From the IMG/VR virus record IMGVR_UViG_3300005537_000001, positions 1 to 64,000 of that record: 64,000 bases of DNA; one strand, given 5' to 3'. The translations under genes were made by a program, and so were the position numbers. The notes under the pieces are model-generated. The model ran no database searches and was not told the DNA's origin. It saw only the letters and a list, made by a program, of their open reading frames with translations. This document shows positions 1,603 to 21,884 of this stretch, one piece after another; position 1 is the first letter of the stretch; each line of letters begins with the position of its first letter.

Positions 1603-2583
1603 ATGCAAATGAGCAAAGTTTACAAGCGAAAATATCATATCTTCTATAAAACTACATGTTTAGTAACAAATAAGTTTTATTATGGGATACATTCTACAGA
1701 TGACCTAAATGATGGTTACTTGGGAAGTGGTAGAAGAATATATCGGTCCATAAAGAAGCATGGCGCTAAAAATCATCGACGGGAAATTCTTGAATACTTT
1801 GCTACTCGTAAAGATCTTTCAAATAAAGAAGTGGAGATTGTTAATTCGGATCTTTTAGAAGATCCGATGTGTTTGAATTTAAAGCATGGTGGGGATGATG
1901 GTATATTGAGTGAAGAATCTCGTAAACAACTAGGTAAATCTGTAAAGAAAATGTGGAAACGTCTCAAAGCGGCTGGATATGTTCCACCGCCACAATCACC
2001 CGAAACTATCGCAAAGCGTGCTGCGAAAAATACCGGTAAAAAGCGAACTCCAGAACAAAAATTGAATGCTCAAAGGGCACAACGCAAAGCACAAAAGCGA
2101 TTAGCAAAAGACGTGCAATACAAGACCGAGCTGTCTAGCAAGATAAAAGTTGGTCAAGCAGCGATGTCAGAAGATGCCGTAGCTCTTATGCGGAAGCGTC
2201 AATCCGATGCAGCCATCGCAGAAAGACCAAATCGCTCTGCTGAAAGTTACGAAAAAATGGCAGCAAAGAATAGAGGTAGAAAGCGTTCGCCAGAAACCGG
2301 TCCTAAGATTGCAGCTGCCCACAAGGCAAAAACGGTTACCATTCTAGTTCCTAAAAAGAAGCAAGCTAGAACATGGACGATTGTAGCAGAAAATGGTGAT
2401 GTATTTGATGTAGAGAATCTAAAAACTTTTTGCATTGAGAAAAACATTCCACAGTCACGCATGTACAAATCACTGCTAAACAGAAAGTTTGTAGCTGGAT
2501 ATCGTGCTATTTCAGTTAGAAATACCGAATACGTTAAACCTATTTCAGTTTGGAAAACCAACCCGATTCTCAAGGCAGCGTAA
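1603..2583 (+). CDS. Free-standing GIY-YIG-type homing endonuclease with NUMOD3-like repeats
   Basis: N-terminal IFYKTTCLVTNKFYYGIHST...YLGSG, followed by basic repeats SPETIAKRAAKNTGKKRTPE and SAESYEKMAAKNRGRKRSPET. AT-rich. Confidence 0.8.
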   Translation: MQMSKVYKRKYHIFYKTTCLVTNKFYYGIHSTDDLNDGYLGSGRRIYRSIKKHGAKNHRREILEYFATRKDLSNKEVEIVNSDLLEDPMCLNLKHGGDDGILSEESRKQLGKSVKKMWKRLKAAGYVPPPQSPETIAKRAAKNTGKKRTPEQKLNAQRAQRKAQKRLAKDVQYKTELSSKIKVGQAAMSEDAVALMRKRQSDAAIAERPNRSAESYEKMAAKNRGRKRSPETGPKIAAAHKAKTVTILVPKKKQARTWTIVAENGDVFDVENLKTFCIEKNIPQSRMYKSLLNRKFVAGYRAISVRNTEYVKPISVWKTNPILKAA

Positions 2584-4721: not shown

Positions 4722-5780
4722 ATGAGATTTACAGAATTTTTGATCGAAGCAAAGGAAGCCCAAACTAAGGTTAGCCTTAAGCTACAAATGATGCTTCCAC
4801 TTACGGACGATGAGATAAAAGCTTCACTTAGGGGATTAGTTAGCGGTGAGGTTCGACTTCATGATTCTACCAGCGTGAAGAAGCAGTCTAGCGGCTGGAA
4901 CATTCACGCTGATCCGACCATTGGCGAGCACGGTGCTGAAATTATTTCTCCAAGGCTATCTCTAAACGATTCGCTTCACGCGCTCGCTAAAATATGTGAT
5001 TGGATGTCTGAGCAGGACGCCAAGACAAACGATTCTTCATCCCTCAAAATCGACATCAGCATTCCCAACATCGGTGAAAAGCTGGATCCGGTAAAGTTGA
5101 TTATGCTAATGGATGATCACGCGGCTACGGCGCTCGCAAAATACGCCCACAAATATTCAGAACCACAGATTGAAGTGATAGCGCAAAAAGTAAAGCTGAC
5201 CGGAAAGCTGCCAGAAACTCTTGATGACATGGAAAGAGATGCTCATAAATTTCTAGGAATTCGCTCTGGGCAAAATAAGCTTTCGATGGGTATCCTAGAG
5301 CTGCGAATTGATGGTGGAGCTGGTTATGAAAAATCACCATCTGACCTCAAGAAGAAAATTTTCAAGCTGGTAAACGCGGTAGAGGTTGCCTGCGATCCAA
5401 TGTCTGAAAAATCAGAATATTTGAGCAAGCTCTTGGAGCTGTTTAACTCAGCTAGTGACGATGAGCACGTTACCAAGAACGACATGCACAAGATACCCGA
5501 AGATCTACACCGGCTCTACAAGCTTAACGCTCAGGTAAATCATGCCTGGAAGATATTCGATAAAGATCAAATTCACGGTGACGCGAGACACGCGCTGATT
5601 ATCATGATAAATATAGCTCTGAAGACGGTTAAGGAATTTAAAACGTCGCTTAACCTACAAGAGAAAACGCTGTTTAAGCGGCTTGCAAAGCAGGTAGCTC
5701 TCCAGACATCAGATGTTGATTCGTATTATGGACACGATGACATGGCGAGATTAAACTTCAAGAAAGAAATAGGTGTTTGA
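4722..5780 (+). CDS. Amidoligase-2-like fold protein, probably degenerate; candidate virion-internal protein
   Basis: WNIHADPTIG...AEIISPRL and LELRIDGG resemble putative amidoligase motifs. N-terminus is MRFTEFLIEAK. Confidence 0.55.
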   Translation: MRFTEFLIEAKEAQTKVSLKLQMMLPLTDDEIKASLRGLVSGEVRLHDSTSVKKQSSGWNIHADPTIGEHGAEIISPRLSLNDSLHALAKICDWMSEQDAKTNDSSSLKIDISIPNIGEKLDPVKLIMLMDDHAATALAKYAHKYSEPQIEVIAQKVKLTGKLPETLDDMERDAHKFLGIRSGQNKLSMGILELRIDGGAGYEKSPSDLKKKIFKLVNAVEVACDPMSEKSEYLSKLLELFNSASDDEHVTKNDMHKIPEDLHRLYKLNAQVNHAWKIFDKDQIHGDARHALIIMINIALKTVKEFKTSLNLQEKTLFKRLAKQVALQTSDVDSYYGHDDMARLNFKKEIGV

Positions 5781-7185: not shown

Positions 7186-9030
7186 ATGGCCACGTTAGTT
7201 TCACCAGGCGTGAGTGTTACAGTCATCGACCAGTCGTTCTTTATCCCGGCTGCGGCACCAACTGTCCCACTGATTTTCGTTGCGACACAGGCTAACAAGC
7301 TACAGCCAGATAATGTAACGCCTGCAACAGGTACTCAAGAGCACAGCGTTGTTCGCACCGTTACATCCATCGGTCAGTCAGTTCAGCTTTATGGCGTGCC
7401 ATTCTTCCGAACTGATAGTTCTGGAAATGCATTTAACGGTTCAGCCCTAAATGAATACGGCTTGTTCGCCCTTAACGAATTTCTTGCTATCGGTAACCTC
7501 GCGTACGTAGTGCGCGCAAACGTTGACCTTCGAAATGCCGCCGTAACATTTATCGGCATTGGAACACCAGTTGCGTCTGGAACGACATTTACCGGCGTTG
7601 GTAACGGCACGATTAATTCAATTACAGCTTCGTCAGCATTTGTTCAGCCACAGACGATAGACGTAATCTTCAACACGACAACCAACTTTACGGTTCAAGG
7701 CTCCGTTTCCGGAATCATCGGCACTGGAATCGTTGGCGTACCATTCACGTCAAGCATAATCAACTTTACGGTTGCTTCTGGTTCGACACCATTTTCACCA
7801 GACGATTTCTTCCAGTTTAACCTTGTCTATACGCCAACATCATATTCCGGCGTGGGCAACGGCATAATGTCAGCAATTACTCCAGGAGTTAACGCGGTTC
7901 CAGAAACATGGTCCATCGTCTTCACGTCACCAACAGCATTCACCGTAACTGGATCTATCCAGGGTCCAACCGCCTCTGGCACAACCGGTTCTGCGTATAC
8001 GAATGGCTTCATCAACTTCACGTTGACACCTGGAACAACGCCATTTAACATCGGTGATGAATTCCAGCTTGTCCTAACGCAGGTAAATCTTTTCAACCCA
8101 CTTGGCGCTACAGATGCCGCGCAGCGCGTTGCCATCACCACCGCGATAGCTGCTGAAATCAACAACAACCCAGAAGTTCAATCTGATATATTCCAGTACA
8201 ACCTAATCGTAGCTCCTGGATATTGGGAAGTTGTCAATGACCTGCAAAATCTGTCAAATAAGGTTTATGGTGAAGCATTCGTAATCGCCGATACACCAAG
8301 CAACCTAACCGCTGAGCAGGTGGCAAATTGGGGTAACACGACCGCTCGCGCGAATGGAACAAACGTAGCTTACTACTACCCATGGGGTCAGGGTTCAAAT
8401 CTTGACGGCAAGCCGGTAGTTGTTGCTCCATCCGGCATCGCGCTAGCTACCTACGCATTTAGCGACAGCGTATCGTACGTATGGTTTGCTCCAGCTGGAG
8501 TTGCACGTGGTGTAGTATCTGGAATCAAATCTGTCGGCTACGTATCTGGCGCGCTAGGAACGGCCGCTGCGTACACTCAAGTCAATTTGAACCAGGGTCA
8601 ACGCGATAATCTATACCAGTTCTTCACGGATATCAACCCAATCGTGTTCTTCCCAAGTCAGGGTCTGTTGGTATGGGGTCAAAAGACTTCTCCAGCAGCC
8701 GCTTCGGCTCTTGATCGCGTAAACGTAGTTCGCTTGGTAATGTTCATTAAGCGTCAGCTTCGAATCGGCTCTATGCCTTTCGTGTTCGAACCAAATGACG
8801 CTATTACGCAGGCAAATCTTGCGGCGGCGGCCAGCGCTTTCCTAAATGACATCTTGACAAAGCGTGGATTGTTTGACTTCGTTGTTCTATGCAACGCATC
8901 CAACAACCCACCATCAGTCGTTGAACAGAATCAACTTTTCATGGATGTAGCCATTCAGCCAGTAATCGCGGCAGAATTCATCTACATTCCAATTACTGTC
9001 CTATCAACTGGCGCAACTTTGCCAGCTTAA
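7186..9030 (+). CDS. Tail sheath protein (gp18-like)
   Basis: N-terminal LVSPGVSVTVID; WFAPAGVARG; INPIVFFP...VWGQKT; LDRVNVVRL; FVFEPND; C-terminal IQPVIAAEFIYI. Confidence 0.95.
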   Translation: MATLVSPGVSVTVIDQSFFIPAAAPTVPLIFVATQANKLQPDNVTPATGTQEHSVVRTVTSIGQSVQLYGVPFFRTDSSGNAFNGSALNEYGLFALNEFLAIGNLAYVVRANVDLRNAAVTFIGIGTPVASGTTFTGVGNGTINSITASSAFVQPQTIDVIFNTTTNFTVQGSVSGIIGTGIVGVPFTSSIINFTVASGSTPFSPDDFFQFNLVYTPTSYSGVGNGIMSAITPGVNAVPETWSIVFTSPTAFTVTGSIQGPTASGTTGSAYTNGFINFTLTPGTTPFNIGDEFQLVLTQVNLFNPLGATDAAQRVAITTAIAAEINNNPEVQSDIFQYNLIVAPGYWEVVNDLQNLSNKVYGEAFVIADTPSNLTAEQVANWGNTTARANGTNVAYYYPWGQGSNLDGKPVVVAPSGIALATYAFSDSVSYVWFAPAGVARGVVSGIKSVGYVSGALGTAAAYTQVNLNQGQRDNLYQFFTDINPIVFFPSQGLLVWGQKTSPAAASALDRVNVVRLVMFIKRQLRIGSMPFVFEPNDAITQANLAAAASAFLNDILTKRGLFDFVVLCNASNNPPSVVEQNQLFMDVAIQPVIAAEFIYIPITVLSTGATLPA

Positions 9031-13756: not shown

Positions 13757-14212
13757 ATGGCATCACGCGGAAGATTCATACCAAGATTCCCTGAAAAATA
13801 TATTGGAGATCCCAAGAAGATTTTCTTTAGAAGTTCCTGGGAGATCGTGGCAATGAAATATTGGGACTCAAGAGCCGACGTGCTAAGATGGAATAGTGAG
13901 GAGATTGCGATTCCATATCTCAGCCCGGCGGATAATAAGGTTCATCTCTACTATCCGGATTTTTACGTAGAGCTCCTTGACAAGGATAATGTGCTGCAGA
14001 AATTTATAGTAGAGGTAAAGCCGTTACATGAGTCAGAAGAAAAATTCGCTAAGGGTGATAGAGCTAAAGCTTCGTTAGAAATAAACAACGCGAAATGGGC
14101 TGCTGCCGCGATCTACTGTGAAACGCGCGGTTACAAGTTTAAAACGATTACCCAGCGTTCTTTGTTTTATCAGAAGCCAAAGAAAGAGAAAAAAGCAGAT
14201 GACAAAGTATAG
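13757..14212 (+). CDS. Head-completion nuclease, T4 gp4-like (TnsA-like PD-(D/E)xK)
   Basis: GRFIPRFPEKYIGDP..IFFRSSWE, WNSEEIAIPY, YYPDF, EVKP, NNAKWAAA. Confidence 0.85.
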   Translation: MASRGRFIPRFPEKYIGDPKKIFFRSSWEIVAMKYWDSRADVLRWNSEEIAIPYLSPADNKVHLYYPDFYVELLDKDNVLQKFIVEVKPLHESEEKFAKGDRAKASLEINNAKWAAAAIYCETRGYKFKTITQRSLFYQKPKKEKKADDKV

Positions 14213-14672
14213 ATACACTGTTCAAAATCCATCACGATACGCTGGTGATCCAAGCAGGGTCACGGCCCGTTCCAAGTGGGAACTGATGTATATGAACGCG
14301 CTTGATATGTCACCAATGGTGCGTAGGTGGGTAAGTGAACCCAAAAATCTTGGTATCGCCTACATCAACCCGCTTGACAGAAAAATACATCAATATTGGC
14401 CTGATTTTTTGGTGCAGTATGTTGATGGAAACGTAGAAATTTTAGAAATTAAACCGCTTAAGGAATCGCTAGCCGAAAATGCTATAAGCAATTTTGATAA
14501 GCTTGCGCTGCTACAAAATGTAGCCAAGTGGGCGGCGGCCAATAATTTCGCTAAAAAGATAGGTGGTAGATTTAGGGTTATAACGGAGCAAAATCTGTTT
14601 AAGAAGAAAACAGCGCGACAGGCAACTCCGTCAAACCCATCAATACCAGCTAGAAAACCCAAAAGGATTTAA
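14199..14672 (+). CDS. Second gp4-like nuclease paralog
   Basis: NPSRYAGDP...RSKWE, WVSEP..IAY, YWPDF, EIKP, NVAKWAAA. Confidence 0.8.
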   Translation: MTKYRYTVQNPSRYAGDPSRVTARSKWELMYMNALDMSPMVRRWVSEPKNLGIAYINPLDRKIHQYWPDFLVQYVDGNVEILEIKPLKESLAENAISNFDKLALLQNVAKWAAANNFAKKIGGRFRVITEQNLFKKKTARQATPSNPSIPARKPKRI

Positions 14673-14674
14673 AC

Positions 14675-15139
14675 ATGAAACCACTGCAGCACCCCCTAGA
14701 ATCAGTTTTCAACATGGGTGAAAATGACATGGATATTGAAAAAGAATATGGTATGACTGAAGCTTCACAGCAGCAGGTAACGCTAACTCCGGTTGAAGCA
14801 CCACCAGACGTCAAGGACGAGGATGATAAGCTTATCGAGGGCAACATTGACCGCGTTTACGACGCCGCGATGGAAGCGTTCAACACGCAGACAGCCTTCA
14901 TTGAAGTTATCGACCCAAAGTTCGCGGCGCGCAACGCCGAAGTAGCCGCAAACTACCTCAACATCGCTCTCCAGGCGGCGGTGGGTCGGTCAAGGGTAAA
15001 AACTGACCGCAAGCGAGCTAACCAAACATTCATCCCGTACGGTCAACCAGGTGGTAAAACTACCAACAATCTCATAATTGCTGACCGCAATGAGATCTTG
15101 AAGATGATTACGGTTGACAGCACTGAAAAGAAGCTGTAG
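14675..15139 (+). CDS. Probable terminase small subunit (gp16-like)
   Basis: Helical protein with ARNAEVA and C-terminal TTNNLIIADRNEILKM, reminiscent of gp16; size and position fit. Confidence 0.55.
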   Translation: MKPLQHPLESVFNMGENDMDIEKEYGMTEASQQQVTLTPVEAPPDVKDEDDKLIEGNIDRVYDAAMEAFNTQTAFIEVIDPKFAARNAEVAANYLNIALQAAVGRSRVKTDRKRANQTFIPYGQPGGKTTNNLIIADRNEILKMITVDSTEKKL

Positions 15140-15205: not shown

Positions 15206-17167
15206 ATGACATTTACGACTGAAGCCAAAAATCATCTAGGTGAACGTTCTTTCCAAACGTACGCTGCTTGGAAGCGCGCGTGCAGGGCGTTCAACCCGAA
15301 AGTTTACTTTGACGGTGATAATGACATCGCCCAAGCCATGGTTGAAGTTGGTGGCACAGGTGGGCAACATCGTTCTATAGGCGAATGGGATGGTGCTGAA
15401 GGTGTCATTTATTCTCATGCAGTTAGAGAAGATAAGGAAGATGTTCTATCTCTGCCAAGACTTGATGCATTTCTGGCTGGCACGCTCATTGAATCCGATG
15501 AGCTAAAGAAGGTAGCTGCTGAGGGTGATGATCACTCTAAGCGTCGAACTGCCGACAAGCTTGAAATTGGCGATGTCGTAGAAATTACCGGCAACGTTAA
15601 TTTCAAGGAACAAACCGGTGAGATAACCCGCTTCGGCAAGGACAAGCATTTTGTCGTCGTTCGCCTGTATAATGGTGGAGAGCACTCATTTCATTCCTCA
15701 GACGTCTCTGAAGCCGACCTCAGCCATGAGGCTCATGAAGAGGAAGACAGTGATGCAAATAAATTTTACGTTGCGTTTTATGACAACGCTGAAGAGCGTT
15801 CTTGGATTGGCGTAATTTCCAAGGAGCACGGTGGTAAGTGGCACGAGAAATCCTTCAAAGGTAAGCCTGAACTTCGCTGGGGTCAGACATACATGTCGTA
15901 CCTTACTCCAGACGACATCATGAATTGGATTCACAAGGACTATCACCGTGGTATTGAAATTGAAGGACCATTTTTCGACGCGCACGAAGCTGAAGAACAC
16001 GTTAAGCAGAACTGGGGTCGCATCGATGAGGCGGTAAAAGCTAAAACACCTTGGGCAGTTCTTAATTCAATCGCCAAGGATCACGGTAAAACCGGATTTG
16101 CAACGCTCAATTCTCAAGATGCAGCAAGATACGTTAACATGAAAAAAGCTGCTAAAATCGCTGAAGATGAAGAGGGTGAATTCGGGTTGATGACTTGCGA
16201 TGAAGCTGCGATGAAGCGCATCATCAACAAGAATCCGGATCTTCTTATCGGTGATGCCAAGAAGATGTTCAAGGCACAGGTAGCAGAAGCTAAAGATCCG
16301 CCAAAGGGAGAAAAGATATCCCTTATGCAGGCTTTTGGTTCTTCTGAACTAGCAGCCCTTGAAAAAGCTGGTATTCACCTCATCGAAAAACCATCATATT
16401 GGGAAGATCTCAACAAGCGCCATGCTGTTGATGAGCTCAAGCTGAAGCGTATCGAAAACATCATCGGGCACAAGCTCAAGGAATATGAAGGTTGGGAAAT
16501 TTATCCAACTATGCATGATGATGACATGCCAAAACATCCTCAATCCAGCGTTGCGAAGATGCCAAAAGAAGATATGTTCATCGTATCTTTCGGCGATGGT
16601 TCTGAGCGCTACCTTTGCGATCGCACTGGCGCTAAATCCTACATACGCTTTTGGGCAAAGATTCTTCCAGGAGTGAATGAAGAAACATTTACAAATTATT
16701 CTGATTGGAAGCAATCGGTACTTCTCTCACACCCAACCCAAGCCAAGAACATCAAGTTTCGCGGTAAGATGGAAGGTGAGAAGACAACCATTTCAGCAAT
16801 TGTCCCTGGACAAGATGCAATCTATGGAATTTGGGACGACGCGATAGAAGCTGGTAAGGTTCTCTCCGAAGCAAAGAAAGAATTTTCTATAAAAGCACTA
16901 CTTGCAGCCTTTGAAAAGCACGGTGCTTCTGCAAACTATGAAGTTAGCGAAGAAACTGAAAATTCTGCTAAATTGGATGTCTCAACATCTCGCGGGGATG
17001 GTACGCTAAAAATTACAGTTTCACCTGGCACTACTTACGCGCACATAATTGCTGACATCTCAATGCGTAGAAAGGGTAAAAGCTCGTTAAAATTTAAAAC
17101 AACCGATTCTCTCCAAAATATTGTTGATCAAATCGATGATGAAATTGACGGCTTGGTACATAACTAA
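15206..17167 (+). CDS. Multidomain hypothetical protein; candidate processed capsid-internal polyprotein
   Basis: Small domains, including a KOW/SH3-like unit and a duplicated F..Y..WK...G.WD unit, separated by xxE|A/E/S/D motifs. Confidence 0.55.
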   Translation: MTFTTEAKNHLGERSFQTYAAWKRACRAFNPKVYFDGDNDIAQAMVEVGGTGGQHRSIGEWDGAEGVIYSHAVREDKEDVLSLPRLDAFLAGTLIESDELKKVAAEGDDHSKRRTADKLEIGDVVEITGNVNFKEQTGEITRFGKDKHFVVVRLYNGGEHSFHSSDVSEADLSHEAHEEEDSDANKFYVAFYDNAEERSWIGVISKEHGGKWHEKSFKGKPELRWGQTYMSYLTPDDIMNWIHKDYHRGIEIEGPFFDAHEAEEHVKQNWGRIDEAVKAKTPWAVLNSIAKDHGKTGFATLNSQDAARYVNMKKAAKIAEDEEGEFGLMTCDEAAMKRIINKNPDLLIGDAKKMFKAQVAEAKDPPKGEKISLMQAFGSSELAALEKAGIHLIEKPSYWEDLNKRHAVDELKLKRIENIIGHKLKEYEGWEIYPTMHDDDMPKHPQSSVAKMPKEDMFIVSFGDGSERYLCDRTGAKSYIRFWAKILPGVNEETFTNYSDWKQSVLLSHPTQAKNIKFRGKMEGEKTTISAIVPGQDAIYGIWDDAIEAGKVLSEAKKEFSIKALLAAFEKHGASANYEVSEETENSAKLDVSTSRGDGTLKITVSPGTTYAHIIADISMRRKGKSSLKFKTTDSLQNIVDQIDDEIDGLVHN

Positions 17168-17168
17168 A

Positions 17169-17693
17169 ATGACAACATTCAAACAATTTATGGCAGAAGC
17201 TGAGGGCGAGAAGATGGCGGTTGCCATGGCTCAAAAGATGCTAAATTCTATGGTAGATGAGCTACCTCATATTCCAGAGCAAATCTCTCAAGGCGCAAAG
17301 CACCACGGTCACAAGTTCGTCGACACTGCGAGTGGTCCATGGGTAGTAACCCACTTCAAGAACGGTGAAAATGAGTTTGTCAAGGTTGAGGCACCTAAGG
17401 GGTCAATGAAGCATCCAATGTTCTTCATCCCTCGCGGTGCATCCAACATGAACGAAGGTGCCGTAAAGAACGCCATCATGGACATCATCGAGAAGGCTGT
17501 TAATCAAGCTGATTATAGCCACGATTACCAGTCAACTCTTGATACCATAAGTGATAAGGTGCGCAAGTTGGATAAAAATAACTTGACAGCTGGGATGACG
17601 CAAAAGCAAATGCGCGAGTTGATTAAGCCAATGTACGCTAAAACCGATCATGACTTAATCATGCATCACCGCAAACTAAAGAGCAAGGGTTAA
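17169..17693 (+). CDS. Hypothetical protein with a capsid-targeting-like N-terminus (MTTFKQFMAEAE)
   Basis: ATG 1 nt after the upstream stop; the N-terminus resembles the T4 CTS MKTYQEFIAE. Confidence 0.6.
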   Translation: MTTFKQFMAEAEGEKMAVAMAQKMLNSMVDELPHIPEQISQGAKHHGHKFVDTASGPWVVTHFKNGENEFVKVEAPKGSMKHPMFFIPRGASNMNEGAVKNAIMDIIEKAVNQADYSHDYQSTLDTISDKVRKLDKNNLTAGMTQKQMRELIKPMYAKTDHDLIMHHRKLKSKG

Positions 17694-17702
17694 GGTACCA
17701 AT

Positions 17703-18884
17703 ATGAAATTACTTCAAGAACTCTCCAAGATGACCGAGGCAGCCGTTATGGGCGTGCTGATGGACACTATCTGCAAGGCGATAGATGCCGCAAAGTGCAA
17801 AGGTGAATCCTACGAACAAGCGCTAAAGAACATCGCGGCAGAATTTCGTAAGCTTGACAAGCATGATTCGTCAAAGATGTCAGATGAGGCTCTCAAGGAT
17901 CTCATCATGTCATTCTACAATCAAGATAAACACCTTAGCGCTAACGACAACGTTGTTTCATACCGCGATACCGGATTCTCAAAGGGTCAAGGTCCCGGAG
18001 TAACTCCAGGCGCAACCGATGGTATCGTAAACAACCGCGTCAATCAAATTAAGGAAGAAGCTGGCGATGATCAGGCAGATGTAGCGAGAGAATTTGAAGC
18101 TCTCATGAAGAAACACAAGAAGAGCATGAAGCCGGCTGACGTCAAGAAATTTGAAAAAGCTTTTGACAACAAGAACAAAGAATGGCTCCATATCTATCAG
18201 CATGACGAATCAGAAGATGAGGATGCTGAGGAGGCGCAGCGAGAAAATCTGCGTGATGCCCTGGGTGAACTGGAGGGCGTCCTCGACGATCTCAAGCATC
18301 ACCTCAAGCTAGCTGAGGAAGAAGGTGTTGAACCAGCTCCGAAGCGCGACCTCAAGGCTGAGGCAATCGGCATAGCGACGGCATGGCTGAATAGCAACTA
18401 CAAAAAGTTCAACCTCCCGCTGAAGGTTCGCCGCGTTCCTACTTCTGGCAAGTATATCATGACCACCGTAGTTGCGAACAAGGGTGAAACTCCAAAGAGA
18501 ATCTTCTTGAAGGTTCTCGATGGTGAGGCAAAGCAGGTATCTTCCAAGGAGTGGAAGATGCTCGATGAAGCTGACATCAGCGCCTCTGGTGGTGATATGG
18601 CTGGAGCGAGTGGCTCACTAGACAATCAATTTCAGGGTGGAATTCCAGTCGGCGCCGCCGATCCCCACAATGGTCCACAGGGTGGTGAAGTTGCTACACC
18701 GCCACCGTCAAACAAGCCACCAGCTGCAAAGGCTCCATCCGGCCCAGCTACTCGCACGATCGCCAAGGGTGGTGACTTTCGAGTAGACCTTGGGCAAAAT
18801 GAACAGGTAAGCATCATTGACGGCAAGGGTAACATTCGCCTCTCAATGCCGATGGTTATCTGGAAAGAACTGACTCGCCAATAA
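17703..18884 (+). CDS. Acidic/charged hypothetical protein; candidate capsid-internal protein
   Basis: Starts MKLLQELSKMTEAA; internal IKE|E, LAE|E and LDE|A motifs. Confidence 0.55.
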   Translation: MKLLQELSKMTEAAVMGVLMDTICKAIDAAKCKGESYEQALKNIAAEFRKLDKHDSSKMSDEALKDLIMSFYNQDKHLSANDNVVSYRDTGFSKGQGPGVTPGATDGIVNNRVNQIKEEAGDDQADVAREFEALMKKHKKSMKPADVKKFEKAFDNKNKEWLHIYQHDESEDEDAEEAQRENLRDALGELEGVLDDLKHHLKLAEEEGVEPAPKRDLKAEAIGIATAWLNSNYKKFNLPLKVRRVPTSGKYIMTTVVANKGETPKRIFLKVLDGEAKQVSSKEWKMLDEADISASGGDMAGASGSLDNQFQGGIPVGAADPHNGPQGGEVATPPPSNKPPAAKAPSGPATRTIAKGGDFRVDLGQNEQVSIIDGKGNIRLSMPMVIWKELTRQ

Positions 18885-19315
18885 TGCGTAAGCTACACTT
18901 CAAGGAGTTTGTTGAGCTTAGAGATAGCTTGTTGGCTATAGCTGAAGCTCATGGCGCTGATGTCGTCGATCGAACACCTGCCCATCACAAGCAGGAAGTT
19001 CCGCTGTACGTTCCAGGTGGAGCTACGGTGGTTGTGCTAAACGACAATGTTACCCCATTTGAAGTAGTTATCGAGGCCATCATGCATGGCACCCACCTGA
19101 GTGAAGCTGAAGCTACAAAGCGAATGATGGCGGCACACAAGAATGGTTGGGCTGCGGTAGCAAGCTATGGAAGTCGAGATCTCGCAGAGACGGTAGCTCA
19201 CAAAATTGAAGAGCACGCTGCCCACAATCCAAACTATGATCATTACAAGCAGCACACCGGTCATCATGGGCCATGGCCACTCACCTGCGAAGTAATGGAC
19301 GCAGACCAAAAATGA
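18884..19315 (+). CDS. clpS: ATP-dependent Clp protease adaptor ClpS
   Basis: VVVLNDNVTPFEVV...A...M..AHKNG.A.V...SRDLAET, the ClpS core. Confidence 0.85.
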   Translation: MRKLHFKEFVELRDSLLAIAEAHGADVVDRTPAHHKQEVPLYVPGGATVVVLNDNVTPFEVVIEAIMHGTHLSEAEATKRMMAAHKNGWAAVASYGSRDLAETVAHKIEEHAAHNPNYDHYKQHTGHHGPWPLTCEVMDADQK

Positions 19316-19833: not shown

Positions 19834-20256
19834 ATGGTTAGAATAAGTGAAGACATTGATGATGTCTTGGGTGAAGAATGCATGCGAATTCTTCTCGCGC
19901 GTAATTCAGATATGTTTCGCGGCGATGACATGCCCGGCCCAGTATGTCTCGTGGACAATGCTGGTAACGTAAGGAACGATTCTTCAGATGTTGATGTAAT
20001 TCCACTTACAGCCTACTCAATCAAAGTTCCTCTCCCACTTAACAGCGATTCGCTTAACGTAATTTTCAACATCAGCGAATTTGCCGAGAAGCGAACGTTC
20101 ATTCACTATTATTCGTGCGCTAAGCGCCCGCACGTAAGCGCTGGTGATGACGTAGTGGTGGTAGATCCCAACACTTTTGAACCACGCAAAAGAGCTGTTG
20201 ATGAGGTGAAAGCGAGAGAGCTAAACTTTGCGATTTTTCGGTTTGGGTTGTCATAA
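19834..20256 (+). CDS. Hypothetical protein
   Basis: SD AGGAG; stop overlaps the terminase start. Confidence 0.6.
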   Translation: MVRISEDIDDVLGEECMRILLARNSDMFRGDDMPGPVCLVDNAGNVRNDSSDVDVIPLTAYSIKVPLPLNSDSLNVIFNISEFAEKRTFIHYYSCAKRPHVSAGDDVVVVDPNTFEPRKRAVDEVKARELNFAIFRFGLS

Positions 20257-21884
20257 TGCCGGCCAATCCGTTTATCAAGCGTGCCCATTCTGAAAATGAA
20301 TACACGCCAGAGCTAGTTCAAGAGCTCAAAAAATGTCAGGCCGATCCGGTTTACTTCATCAGAAACTACGTTTATCTGCAACACCCGGTTCGCGGTAAGC
20401 TTATTTTTAACCTTTACCCGTATCAAGAAGAGCTCGTAAGAACGTGCCAGCACAACAAGCGCGTAATCGCTCTTATCTCACGTCAGATGGGTAAAACTCA
20501 AACGATTTCGATGTACCTTTTGTGGTACGCGATGTTTCACAGCGATAAAACCATAGTCATAGCATCCAAAAATAACGGCCACGCTATGGAAATCATGGAT
20601 CGCATTCGCTTTGCCTATGAAGAACTTCCAAATTGGCTCAAAGCCGGGTGTAAGTATTACAACAAGCACAACATCGAATTTGATAACGGATCAAGAATTA
20701 AATCTGAAGCTACAACTGAAAAAACCGGTAGAGGTCTTGCAGTTTCCAAGCTGTATTTGGACGAATTGGCGTTCGTAAGCCACAAGATTCAAACGACTAT
20801 GTGGCGATCTCTTGCCCCAACCTTGGCTACCGGTGGTGAAGCAATCATTTCATCAACCCCAAATGGCGACACGGATTTATTTTCTACTCTTTGGCGAGGC
20901 GCTAACCTTAACAAGGGCGCCGAGCATGCCCCAGATGCTAAGGAAATTATCAAGACCGAAAATGGAATGAATGCGGCTAACCTATTCGTTCCACTGTTCT
21001 TCCCATGGAATTTGCATCCAGAGCGTGGTGAGCAATATCTCAAGGACATGATCGGTGAGCTTGGCCCTATAGGCTTTAGGCAGGAAGTTTTATGCGAGTT
21101 CATTTCGTCACAAGCCATGCTCATTGACTCACTCAAGCTGTCATATCTCAAACCATCTCGTCCAATAACTGAAAACATGGGTTTCAAGATATGGAAGGAA
21201 AATATTGGTGGGCGTGGTAAAACATATCTTGTTGGTTTGGATCCAGCTACCGGAAACAGCAAGGATTTTTCAGTCATCGAGGTGTTTGAATTTCCTAAGA
21301 TGGAACAGGTGATGGAGCTGAGGTTGAACACCGTCAGCATTCCACTCATCTACGCTAAGCTTAAGTGGCTGTTTAGATTCCTACGAAAGCCAGATGCTGG
21401 TAAGGGTAGAGCTGAAGTAATTTGGTCATTTGAGCGCAACGGCGTTGGTGAAGCTTTGGTTGCGATGATTCAAAACGATGATTCGCCGGATGGCGGAGTC
21501 TACATAGACGGTGTTGATCTCTACAATGAGAATCCGCTGCGCCTCGGTTGCTACACGACTGGTAAATCCAAGATGCTTTCGTGCATGCAGATGAAGAATC
21601 TTATCGAGAAAGGCGCTACTGGAATTGTCATTCATTCGGATCTTTTGCTGTATGAGCTGCAAAATTTCGTTTCGCAGGCTGGCACGTTTATGGCTAAGGA
21701 CGGATGTACCGATGATGCTATCTCAGCTCTTACCATCGTCATGAAAACTTTATCGCGACTTGCGGCATACGATGAGAAGGCTCGAAAGGTAGTTTACGAA
21801 TCGGTAGATCCGGATTCTGATCATGTTGATCCTGATACACCACAGGACCAGTATGGTGATGAGCCCGTTCCCATCTTTGTTTAG
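20256..21884 (+). CDS. Terminase large subunit (gp17-like)
   Basis: DPVYFIRNY, Walker A SRQMGKT, Walker B LYLDELAF, SSTPNG, nuclease GLDPATG..D.S and TDDAISA. No intein. Confidence 0.95.
   Translation: MPANPFIKRAHSENEYTPELVQELKKCQADPVYFIRNYVYLQHPVRGKLIFNLYPYQEELVRTCQHNKRVIALISRQMGKTQTISMYLLWYAMFHSDKTIVIASKNNGHAMEIMDRIRFAYEELPNWLKAGCKYYNKHNIEFDNGSRIKSEATTEKTGRGLAVSKLYLDELAFVSHKIQTTMWRSLAPTLATGGEAIISSTPNGDTDLFSTLWRGANLNKGAEHAPDAKEIIKTENGMNAANLFVPLFFPWNLHPERGEQYLKDMIGELGPIGFRQEVLCEFISSQAMLIDSLKLSYLKPSRPITENMGFKIWKENIGGRGKTYLVGLDPATGNSKDFSVIEVFEFPKMEQVMELRLNTVSIPLIYAKLKWLFRFLRKPDAGKGRAEVIWSFERNGVGEALVAMIQNDDSPDGGVYIDGVDLYNENPLRLGCYTTGKSKMLSCMQMKNLIEKGATGIVIHSDLLLYELQNFVSQAGTFMAKDGCTDDAISALTIVMKTLSRLAAYDEKARKVVYESVDPDSDHVDPDTPQDQYGDEPVPIFV

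What the first reader, a model, noticed from the sequence alone, without database searches (positions are those of the whole stretch)
15206..17167. 653-aa apparent polyprotein of small domains separated by protease-like xxE sites
Seen: a unit SFQTYAAWKRAC...F.GD...IGEWDG.EG near the N-terminus recurs as TFTNYSDWKQSV...FRG...YGIWDDAIEAG near residue 495. A KOW/SH3-like unit (LEIGDVVEITG...TGEITRFG...VVVRL) is present. Boundaries coincide with TTE|A, VRE|D, LIE|S, IDE|A, VAE|A, VNE|E and LSE|A. Inference: the gene encodes about 7 small proteins released by the prohead protease, which would be a compact way to deliver many effectors.
Basis: partly seen in the sequence, partly recalled or inferred. 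Interest (0 to 1): 0.62.

Follow-up and report, generated by a model that had tools for sequence, protein, structure and literature searches.

The report
Modular internal head polyprotein of jumbo phage
This 653-residue gene of a 368-kb T4-like jumbo phage strings together six or seven small, independently folding modules, joined at motifs that match the cutting site of the phage's own head protease, so it is most likely an internal head protein that is cut into pieces, although no cutting has been shown.

Summary
The ORF at 15206-17167 encodes 653 aa. The N-terminal unit recurs at about residue 490. Residues 114-172 form a KOW/SH3-like barrel. All seven xxE sites sit at the edges of confidently predicted domains.

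Bare "xxE" means little, because the protein has 62 Glu. The specific motif (L/I/V)-x-E followed by A/S/G does mean something. Across 172 metagenomic relatives it fills 74-90% of the junctions of modules W, B2 and C, against 28% of random windows.

The modules recur alone, duplicated and in other orders. Most relatives start with a leader such as MKLSKELLSLVE|A, which resembles the T4 capsid-targeting sequence. The genome encodes a T4 gp21-type prohead protease. The gene lies in a cluster of leader-bearing genes next to the large terminase. A Pseudomonas phage PA5oct homolog in the same slot is recorded as a virion protein.

Best reading: an internal head protein built as a polyprotein and cut by the prohead protease into about six folded products of 7-21 kDa.

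Caveats: cleavage and packaging are inferred, not shown. This protein's own leader is only 6 residues long with an atypical P3. No module has a known function, so "effector" is conjecture.

The parts
15206..17167 (+). Whole ORF, 653 aa (P0001), 73 kDa, pI 5.5
15206..15223 (+). Residues 1-6, short leader MTFTTE. It aligns with the end of the 11-18-aa CTS-like leaders of relatives, which cut before AKNHLGE. Here it is truncated and P3 is T.
15224..15430 (+). Residues 7-75, module W copy 1 (A-type), about 65-aa alpha+beta unit, ends at VRE75
15431..15493 (+). Residues 76-96, acidic disordered linker (pLDDT below 50) bounded by VRE75 and LIE96
15494..15712 (+). Residues 97-169, module B1: a helix followed by a KOW/SH3-like barrel (114-172). 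Ends at VSE169, but this junction is not enriched for the motif across the family.
15713..16030 (+). Residues 170-275, module B2, the most conserved core (50-80% identity). Ends in NWGx(L/I/V)xE followed by A/S. E275 is at least 90% conserved.
16031..16288 (+). Residues 276-361, module C, helical, ends at VAE361
16289..16681 (+). Residues 362-492, module D. Folded alone it gives pLDDT 91.8 and pTM 0.83, with no structural match. Elsewhere it is mostly a stand-alone 133-176-aa protein with its own leader. Followed here by the linker LPGVNE492.
16682..16870 (+). Residues 493-555, module W copy 2 (E-type). Ends in the conserved G-x-V-L-S-E motif. L553 and E555 are at least 90% conserved.
16871..17164 (+). 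Residues 556-653, tail F. No homolog found. Low-confidence alpha/beta model (pLDDT about 55, effectively without alignment).
17169..17693 (+). Next gene, 174 aa, pI 9.0. Its leader MTTFKQFMAE|A is nearly the T4 internal-protein CTS (MKTYQEFIAE|A).
   Evidence: T4 sequence from own knowledge, CTS properties from PMC9026906
17703..18884 (+). 393-aa gene with leader MKLLQELSKMTE|AA. Its C-terminal 44 aa recur as the end module of four family polyproteins.
18884..19315 (+). ClpS-like gene (143 aa) with a CTS-like start. A ClpS module is fused to the C-terminus of relative P0052.
20256..21884 (+). Large terminase, which marks the downstream end of the leader-bearing gene cluster

Best explanation
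P0001 is a member of a large, unnamed family of modular internal head proteins of T4-like jumbo phages. I infer that it enters the prohead core and is cut there by the phage's T4 gp21-type protease after Glu in (L/I/V)-x-E motifs at the module junctions.

The expected products are W1 (7-75), a 21-residue peptide (76-96), B1B2 (97-275), C (276-361), D (362-492), W2 (493-555) and F (556-653). They range from 7 to 21 kDa, which is the size range of T4 internal proteins. They would stay with the DNA and probably enter the host with it.

Each module tends to carry its own cutting site: A-type W at its start, and B2, C and E-type W at their ends. Modules can therefore be fused, split or shuffled between phages without losing processing, and a single leader could load several modules.

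Shown: the modular architecture, module independence, motif conservation, presence of the protease, and the genomic cluster. Inferred: packaging, cleavage, delivery, and any role as an effector.
For: 1. Architecture. The AF2 model has pTM 0.34, with pLDDT above 90 in residues 5-74, about 110-170, 183-275, 281-363 and 492-555, separated by low-confidence linkers. Module D folded alone gives pLDDT 91.8.

2. Independence. There are 923 representative proteins at E<=1e-3, and the hits are per module. D, B2, W and B1B2 exist as stand-alone proteins of 100-197 aa. The order B2-B1, duplicated W or C, and D-W also occur. In this genome the modules occur only in this gene.

3. Leaders. Most relatives, whatever module follows, begin MK(L/I)xxELLxLxE| or MKIxELFE|. 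In 133 leaders P3 is L 62, I 25, V 24, and P1' is A 30, G 26. In T4, CTS residues 8 and 10 (P3 and P1) govern processing, and Asp at position 10 blocks it (PMC9026906).

4. Junctions. [LIVM]xE fills 15-aa windows at W start 74%, W end 88%, B2 end about 90%, C start 87% and C end 86%, against 28% of random windows. With A/G/S at P1' the figures are 50-77% against 12%. E275 and E555 are two of only four Glu that are at least 90% conserved.

5. The same site serves as leader end and as internal junction. xxE|AKNHLGE precedes A-type W in 15 N-terminal and 8 of 10 internal copies. In P0001, VAE361|A lies 14 residues before the D-module AFG anchor, as in stand-alone P0111 (14) and P0140 (13), where the site is the leader end.

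6. Protease. Pfam Peptidase_S77 hits at E 3e-24 and phrog_207 at 9e-53, in a T4-ordered head module of portal, protease, then MCP a few genes downstream.

7. Context. P0001 is followed by genes starting MTTFKQFMAE|A and MKLLQELSKMTE|A. In relatives the same slot, between the TnsA-like genes and TerL, holds family members. In L010 the slot holds about 19 genes, and nearly all have such leaders.

8. The PA5oct protein EST35_0203 sits in the same slot, carries a W module, and is annotated as a structural protein by ESI-MS/MS.
Against: - No proteomic or biochemical evidence exists for cleavage or packaging of this protein or of any close relative.
- P0001's own leader is 6 residues long with Thr at P3. 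It is the only exception among 15 N-terminal A-type copies, so targeting by the usual route is doubtful.
- The conserved NWGxLxE and VLSE motifs end secondary-structure elements, so they could be conserved for folding reasons.
- The protein is acidic (pI 5.5), whereas T4 internal proteins are described as basic and DNA-contacting.
- Three of the seven proposed sites have atypical P3 or P1' residues.
- The B1 end shows no enrichment (40% against 28%; 11% against 12% with a small P1').
- The counts come from related sequences and are not independent observations.
Confidence: 0.58

Rival explanations
1. It is a multi-domain virion or head protein that works uncut, apart from at most removal of the leader. 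The hydrophobic-x-Glu motifs at domain ends would then be structural caps or by-products of a Glu-rich composition.
For: No cleavage data exist. The protein has 62 Glu in 653 residues. VLSE ends the last strand of W and NWGxLxE follows the last helix of B2, so folding constraints could conserve them. [quoted passage not shown]
Against: The same motif, with the same P3 (L>I>V) and small P1' preference, occurs at leader ends and at junctions of unrelated modules. It persists when the neighbouring module changes. It lies in low-pLDDT coil for E75, E96, E361 and E492.
Confidence: 0.22
2. It is a scaffold or core component, like T4 gp22, gp67 and gp68. It would be cut into pieces that leave the head, rather than cargo kept and delivered to the host.
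For: It lies in the late structural region, is acidic (pI 5.5), and has multiple predicted cuts, as T4 core proteins do (own knowledge of T4; PMC9026906).
Against: The modules are compact alpha/beta folds conserved at 50-80% identity, not coiled coils. A separate scaffold-like 258-aa gene follows the protease. The PA5oct homolog is recorded in mature virions. The locus is hypervariable in content, unlike essential core genes.
Confidence: 0.12
3. It is a non-virion regulatory protein, a NusG/Spt5-like transcription factor, as one JGI annotation of a relative suggests.
For: B1 has a KOW fold. JGI names P0031 a NusG antitermination factor.
Against: Only the small barrel matches. There is no NGN domain and no Pfam KOW or NusG hit. 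The CTS-like leaders, the late-gene context and the virion record of the PA5oct homolog point elsewhere.
Confidence: 0.04

Closest known systems
T4 internal proteins IPI, IPII and IPIII, with their capsid-targeting sequence (CTS), processed by the gp21 prohead protease
   Same: Relatives have a short N-terminal leader ending in hydrophobic-x-Glu before a small residue. The genome has a gp21-type (Peptidase_S77) protease. The predicted products are 7-21 kDa. The set of leader-bearing genes is hypervariable. The neighbouring gene's leader MTTFKQFMAE|A almost copies the T4 CTS.
   Different: Here many modules sit in one polypeptide with internal sites, whereas T4 internal proteins are single-module genes. 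The protein is acidic, not basic. Its own leader is truncated. The cluster lies beside the large terminase. There is no sequence similarity to any T4 internal protein.
Ejection and inner-body proteins of phiKZ-like giant phages (phiKZ, 201phi2-1, SPN3US), cut by the S80 prohead protease
   Same: They are head-internal proteins cut after Glu at a three-residue motif, sometimes at several sites, and they form paralog families (PMC5694885).
   Different: Those phages use an S80 protease with A/S/G at P3. Here the protease is S77-type and P3 is L/I/V. Their cuts mostly remove propeptides rather than separate a string of shuffled modules. No homology was found.
Polyvalent proteins of phages and conjugative elements (Iyer et al. 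2017, PMC5512222)
   Same: They put many unrelated domains in one polypeptide delivered with the DNA, show extensive domain shuffling, and are proposed to be released by proteolysis, by analogy with RNA-virus polyproteins.
   Different: Those proteins carry an embedded zincin-like peptidase (MPTase) and recognisable enzyme domains. P0001 has neither. Release here would be in trans, by the head maturation protease at conserved junction motifs.
Pseudomonas phage PA5oct protein EST35_0203 (498 aa)
   Same: It occupies the same slot directly upstream of the large terminase. It has a W module (35-42% identity to residues 6-131) preceded by LDE|E, and a leader ending in VKE|S. It is recorded as a virion protein by ESI-MS/MS.
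   Different: Only the W module is shared, and the rest is unrelated. Its processing has not been reported.

Membership tests
T4-type CTS-bearing internal head proteins | N-terminal leader of about 10 residues ending in (L/I)-x-E before the cut | tested here: inconclusive
   Most of the 172 relatives have such a leader. P0001 itself has only MTFTTE|A, with 6 residues and P3 = T.
T4-type CTS-bearing internal head proteins | The genome encodes a gp21-type (Peptidase_S77) prohead protease | tested here: met
   The ORF at G000:C1:353256-353912 hits Pfam PF03420 at E 3.3e-24, above the cut-off, and phrog_207 at 9e-53, within a T4-ordered head module.
T4-type CTS-bearing internal head proteins | Physically present inside the head and cut after Glu | not testable with these tools
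   The only evidence is indirect: the GenBank note 'ESI-MS/MS structural protein' for the PA5oct homolog. The paper's supplements are not held.
T4-type CTS-bearing internal head proteins | Small basic protein | tested here: not met
   The whole protein has pI 5.5. Module pI values are 5.1-6.3, except C at 8.8. The module sizes (7-21 kDa) do fit.
Polyvalent proteins (Iyer et al. 2017) | Several unrelated domains in one phage polypeptide, with shuffled architectures | tested here: met
Polyvalent proteins (Iyer et al. 2017) | Embedded MPTase/zincin peptidase and recognisable effector enzyme domains | tested here: not met
   P0001 has no Pfam, PHROG, NCBIfam or PDB sequence hit. Among 41 relatives only isolated hits appear (ClpS, DnaJ zinc finger, FAA_hydro_N_2), and no peptidase.
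NusG/Spt5 | KOW barrel | tested here: met
   Z 8.3 and 8.1, rmsd 1.3-1.5 A over 53 residues; Foldseek probability about 1.0.
NusG/Spt5 | NGN domain that binds RNA polymerase | tested here: not met
   No Pfam hit was found, and the structural matches cover only residues 107-185.
phiKZ-type ejection proteins | S80 protease and (S/A/G)-x-E sites | tested here: not met
   The protease here is S77-type. P3 at the conserved sites is L, I or V.
Prohead scaffold (gp22-like) | Long helical or coiled-coil protein | tested here: not met
   The model shows compact alpha/beta modules.

The most novel reading that the evidence does not exclude
T4-like jumbo phages keep a hypervariable cluster of head-cargo genes beside the large terminase. 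In it, small modules act as self-contained cassettes, each carrying its own prohead-protease site. Fusion into a polyprotein and fission into single leader-bearing genes would then be interchangeable, and one leader could load six or more different cargo proteins in equal amounts for delivery into the host. This would be a trans-processed phage polyprotein system, distinct from the MPTase-based polyvalent proteins.
Probability: 0.4. Interest if true: 0.7.

Novelty: new variant of a known kind. Interest (0 to 1): 0.6.

Why it matters
T4 internal proteins are the classic example of proteins injected with phage DNA to disarm host defences, and their leader is used to load foreign proteins into capsids.

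If this family is processed as inferred, it extends that principle in two ways. It would include polyproteins with portable cleavage sites. It would also reveal a very large, unannotated pool of candidate head-cargo modules in uncultured jumbo phages: at least 923 cluster representatives. None of the modules tested (D, and the whole-protein model apart from the KOW barrel) matched a known fold; W, B2, C and F were not searched alone.

It also yields a rule that could find such cargo in metagenomes: a leader, plus (L/I/V)-x-E before a small residue at module edges, plus an S77 protease. PA5oct offers a cultured phage in which to test it.

Tried and rejected
- Family and sequence scans. Pfam, PHROGs, NCBIfam and PDB sequence searches of P0001 gave nothing beyond a sub-threshold OB-fold hit. 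Megablast against phage records found no match.
- BLASTP of the two repeat copies found no alignment. Smith-Waterman with shuffles and iterated HMMs were needed.
- Alignment for folding. One alignment of P0001 with module fragments was tested locally and rejected, because MAFFT misplaced unrelated fragment groups. I used 40 colinear full-length relatives for the whole protein, and a separate alignment for D. As a result, D in the full-length model, and F, are effectively modelled without an alignment.
- Fold of D. There was no match by Foldseek against PDB (best E 0.13), VIA-align wide (best Z 4.0) or the ESM Atlas (TM at most 0.39). Atlas feature and structure look-ups for B2 and D gave no usable lead. 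W, B2, C and F were not folded alone, so I make no claim about the novelty of their folds.
- Tail F had no homolog in two word searches.
- Contexts of two D-only proteins were short contigs and uninformative.
- PA5oct paper supplements are not held, so peptide coverage of the homolog could not be checked.
No reads were laid, so the short leader could not be checked against raw reads.
- A B1|B2 cut at VSE169 was considered and down-weighted, because that junction shows no motif enrichment in the family.

Full report
**1. What is there**

The window is the first 64 kb of a 368,054-bp virus record with direct terminal repeats. All genes near the finding lie on the + strand and form a T4-like late module:
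- neck protein, sheath stabiliser and sheath (7186-9030)
- tube-like genes
- two TnsA-like endonuclease genes
- a weak small-terminase-like gene (14675-15139)
- the ORF in question (15206-17167)
- three to four small genes
- the large terminase (20256-21884)

The ORF encodes 653 aa. Stops lie in frame upstream, and a GGGG run sits 9 nt before the ATG, so the start is sound.

**2. The observation**

*Repeat.* BLASTP sees no similarity between the two ends. A Smith-Waterman alignment of residues 1-90 against 486-560 scores 52, against 23.5 +/- 4.4 for 2000 shuffles, and none of the shuffles reached it. HMMs iterated from either copy pick up the other in 41 of 44 relatives. I call this roughly 65-residue module W.

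*KOW/SH3-like unit.* Residues 114-172 superpose on DSIF KOW6-7 (Z 8.3, rmsd 1.3 A, 53 residues) and on NusG KOW (Z 8.1).

*Sites.* All seven listed xxE sites exist and lie at the edges of confidently modelled domains. With 62 Glu in 653 residues, bare xxE is expected near any boundary. Only the narrower motif analysed below is informative.

**3. Architecture**

With 40 colinear relatives as the alignment, AlphaFold2 gives pTM 0.34. pLDDT is above 90 in residues 5-74, about 110-170, 183-275, 281-363 and 492-555. It is below 50 in 1-4, 75-96, 176-182, 366-378 and 556-560. Module D (362-492) folded with its own 39-sequence alignment gives pLDDT 91.8 and pTM 0.83. The protein is therefore a string of independent folds: W1, B1 (KOW), B2, C, D, W2 and an orphan tail F.

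**4. Relatives and module shuffling**

The word search found 43 relatives of 374-1132 aa. They share only pieces of the query. The exhaustive search found 923 cluster representatives at E<=1e-3, and these hits are also per module.

A module map of 172 proteins shows:
- D-only proteins of 133-176 aa
- B2-only proteins of 122-137 aa
- a W-only protein of 100 aa
- B1B2 proteins of 197-243 aa
- the order B2-B1, duplicated W or C, and D-W

In this genome the modules occur only in this gene.

Domains of the neighbouring genes recur as modules inside relatives' polyproteins. ClpS appears at the C-terminus of P0052. The last 44 residues of the 393-aa neighbour appear at the end of four relatives.

**5. 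Leaders**

Most relatives, whatever module comes first, begin with MK(L/I)xxELLxLxE| or MKIxELFE|. In 133 distinct leaders P3 is L 62, I 25, V 24, and P1' is A 30, G 26.

This matches the T4 capsid-targeting sequence in two respects. In T4, the first 10 residues of IPIII suffice for encapsidation. Residues 8 and 10 (P3 and P1) govern processing, and Asp at position 10 blocks it (PMC9026906). T-even internal proteins are described as a diverse set of defence-countering proteins that share only the CTS (PMC3012670).

**6. Junction motifs**

Each module tends to carry a site.
- A-type W is preceded by xxE|AKNHLGE in 15 N-terminal copies, where this is the leader end, and in 8 of 10 internal copies.
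- B2 ends in NWGx(L/I/V)xE followed by A/S in 87 of 97 copies.
- E-type W ends in GxVLSE followed by G/A/S.
- C is preceded (20 of 23) and followed (18 of 21) by such motifs.

Occupancy of [LIVM]xE in 15-residue windows:

| Position | [LIVM]xE | with A/G/S at P1' |
|---|---|---|
| W start | 74% | 53% |
| W end | 88% | 62% |
| B2 end | about 90% | 77% |
| C start | 87% | 52% |
| C end | 86% | 50% |
| B1 end | 40% | 11% |
| Random windows | 28% | 12% |

E275 and E555 are two of only four Glu that are at least 90% conserved among 41 aligned relatives.

In P0001, VAE361|A lies 14 residues before the conserved AFG anchor of D. Stand-alone D proteins P0111 (14) and P0140 (13) have the same spacing from their leader end; other D proteins range wider. 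The B1 end shows no enrichment, so B1B2 probably stays in one piece.

**7. Protease and genomic setting**

The genome has a T4-ordered head module: portal, a 224-aa basic protein, a gp21-type protease, a 258-aa leader-bearing protein and, a few genes downstream, the major capsid protein. The protease hits Pfam Peptidase_S77 at E 3e-24 and phrog_207 at 9e-53.

The gene right after P0001 most likely starts at 17169 with MTTFKQFMAE|A. This is almost the T4 internal-protein CTS as I recall it (own knowledge), and the protein is basic (pI 9.0). The next gene starts MKLLQELSKMTE|AA. The ClpS-like gene also has a CTS-like start.

Relatives on 358-kb and 218-kb contigs sit in the same slot between the TnsA-like genes and the terminase. 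In the second contig the slot holds about 19 genes, nearly all with such leaders. They include a Zeta-toxin/AAA_33-type P-loop protein and a weak T7-kinase-like protein.

In Pseudomonas phage PA5oct the gene directly upstream of the terminase is EST35_0203. It carries a W module and is annotated as a structural protein found by ESI-MS/MS. The paper reports 93 virion proteins but does not discuss this one.

**8. Interpretation**

The best reading is a polyprotein form of a T4-type internal head protein, cut by the prohead protease into products of 7.6, 2.3, 20.7, 9.4, 15.0, 7.0 and 10.7 kDa.

Shown: modularity, shuffling, motif conservation, the protease gene, and the cluster of leader-bearing genes. 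Inferred: packaging, cleavage, retention in the head, and delivery.

The main doubts are these:
- P0001's leader is only 6 residues long with Thr at P3. It is the sole exception among 15 N-terminal A-type copies.
- The protein is acidic.
- Two of the conserved motifs end secondary-structure elements, so they could be conserved for folding.
- The counts come from related sequences.

No module has a known function. D has no structural match, and F has no homolog. "Effector" therefore remains conjecture.

**9. Comparison with what is known**

The protein works like the T4 internal proteins with their CTS. It also resembles giant-phage ejection proteins cut after Glu (PMC5694885), and in concept the polyvalent proteins of Iyer et al. 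(PMC5512222).

It differs from each. T4 internal proteins are single modules. phiKZ-type phages use an S80 protease with A/S/G at P3. Polyvalent proteins carry their own peptidase and recognisable enzyme domains. I therefore rate it a new variant of a known kind.

**10. Limits of this work**

Noticed in passing
window 17169-17693 (+): A 174-aa basic protein (pI 9.0) that starts MTTFKQFMAE|A, almost the T4 internal-protein capsid-targeting sequence. The ORF list reports it from an upstream TTG at 17121, but the ATG at 17169, 2 nt after the stop of P0001, is the more likely start.
   Followed up: partly
window 18884-19315 (+): A phage ClpS-like adaptor (Pfam ClpS 2.5e-15; NCBIfam hits below their cut-offs) with a CTS-like start (MRKLHFKEFVE...). 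A ClpS module is fused to the C-terminus of family member P0052. This may be a packaged modulator of host Clp proteolysis.
   Followed up: partly
L010:781-16512 (218-kb metagenomic contig): About 19 consecutive genes between the TnsA-like genes and the large terminase, nearly all with T4-IP-like leaders (MISFKQFIQE, MLTFKQFVSE, MKIKELLE and others). One is a Zeta_toxin/AAA_33 P-loop protein and one a weak T7-kinase-like protein. It looks like a hypervariable head-cargo locus.
   Followed up: partly
window 13757-14212 and 14118-14672 (+): Two tandem TnsA-like endonuclease-fold genes (Pfam Tn7_TnsA-like_N 8e-19). PHROGs labels them 'head closure', and the MIJ3 record calls the counterpart a Holliday junction resolvase. 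The pair is conserved in the same place in relatives (L009, L010).
   Followed up: no
G000:C1:346341-346679 (L004; L011:2351-2743): A second, weak Peptidase_S77-like match (E 9.6e-4) in a 130-aa ORF about 7 kb upstream of the real prohead protease. It recalls the truncated protease paralog described for SPN3US.
   Followed up: no
relatives P0094, P0099, P0102, P0114, P0131, P0159 and others: A short conserved motif, GE(V/I)(V/I)xxxFGKK, directly follows the predicted cut. It occurs after N-terminal leaders and at internal sites upstream of module D. Its role is unknown.
   Followed up: no
window 1603-2583 (+): A homing-endonuclease-like gene (phrog_314, 3e-39) inserted between the neck gene and a virion structural gene.
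   Followed up: no
window 16871-17164 (+), residues 556-653: The C-terminal tail F has no detectable homolog, even among close relatives that share every other module.
   Followed up: yes
window 4722-5780 (+) and G000:C1:89318-90052, 199087-200085, 353914-354690: Further genes of this phage with CTS-like leaders (MRFTEFLIEAKE|A, MSLLQDLFQLNE|K, MSSLFELLEIAE|V, MLIQDLLNISE|A). They are candidates for other protease substrates or head-cargo proteins.
   Followed up: no
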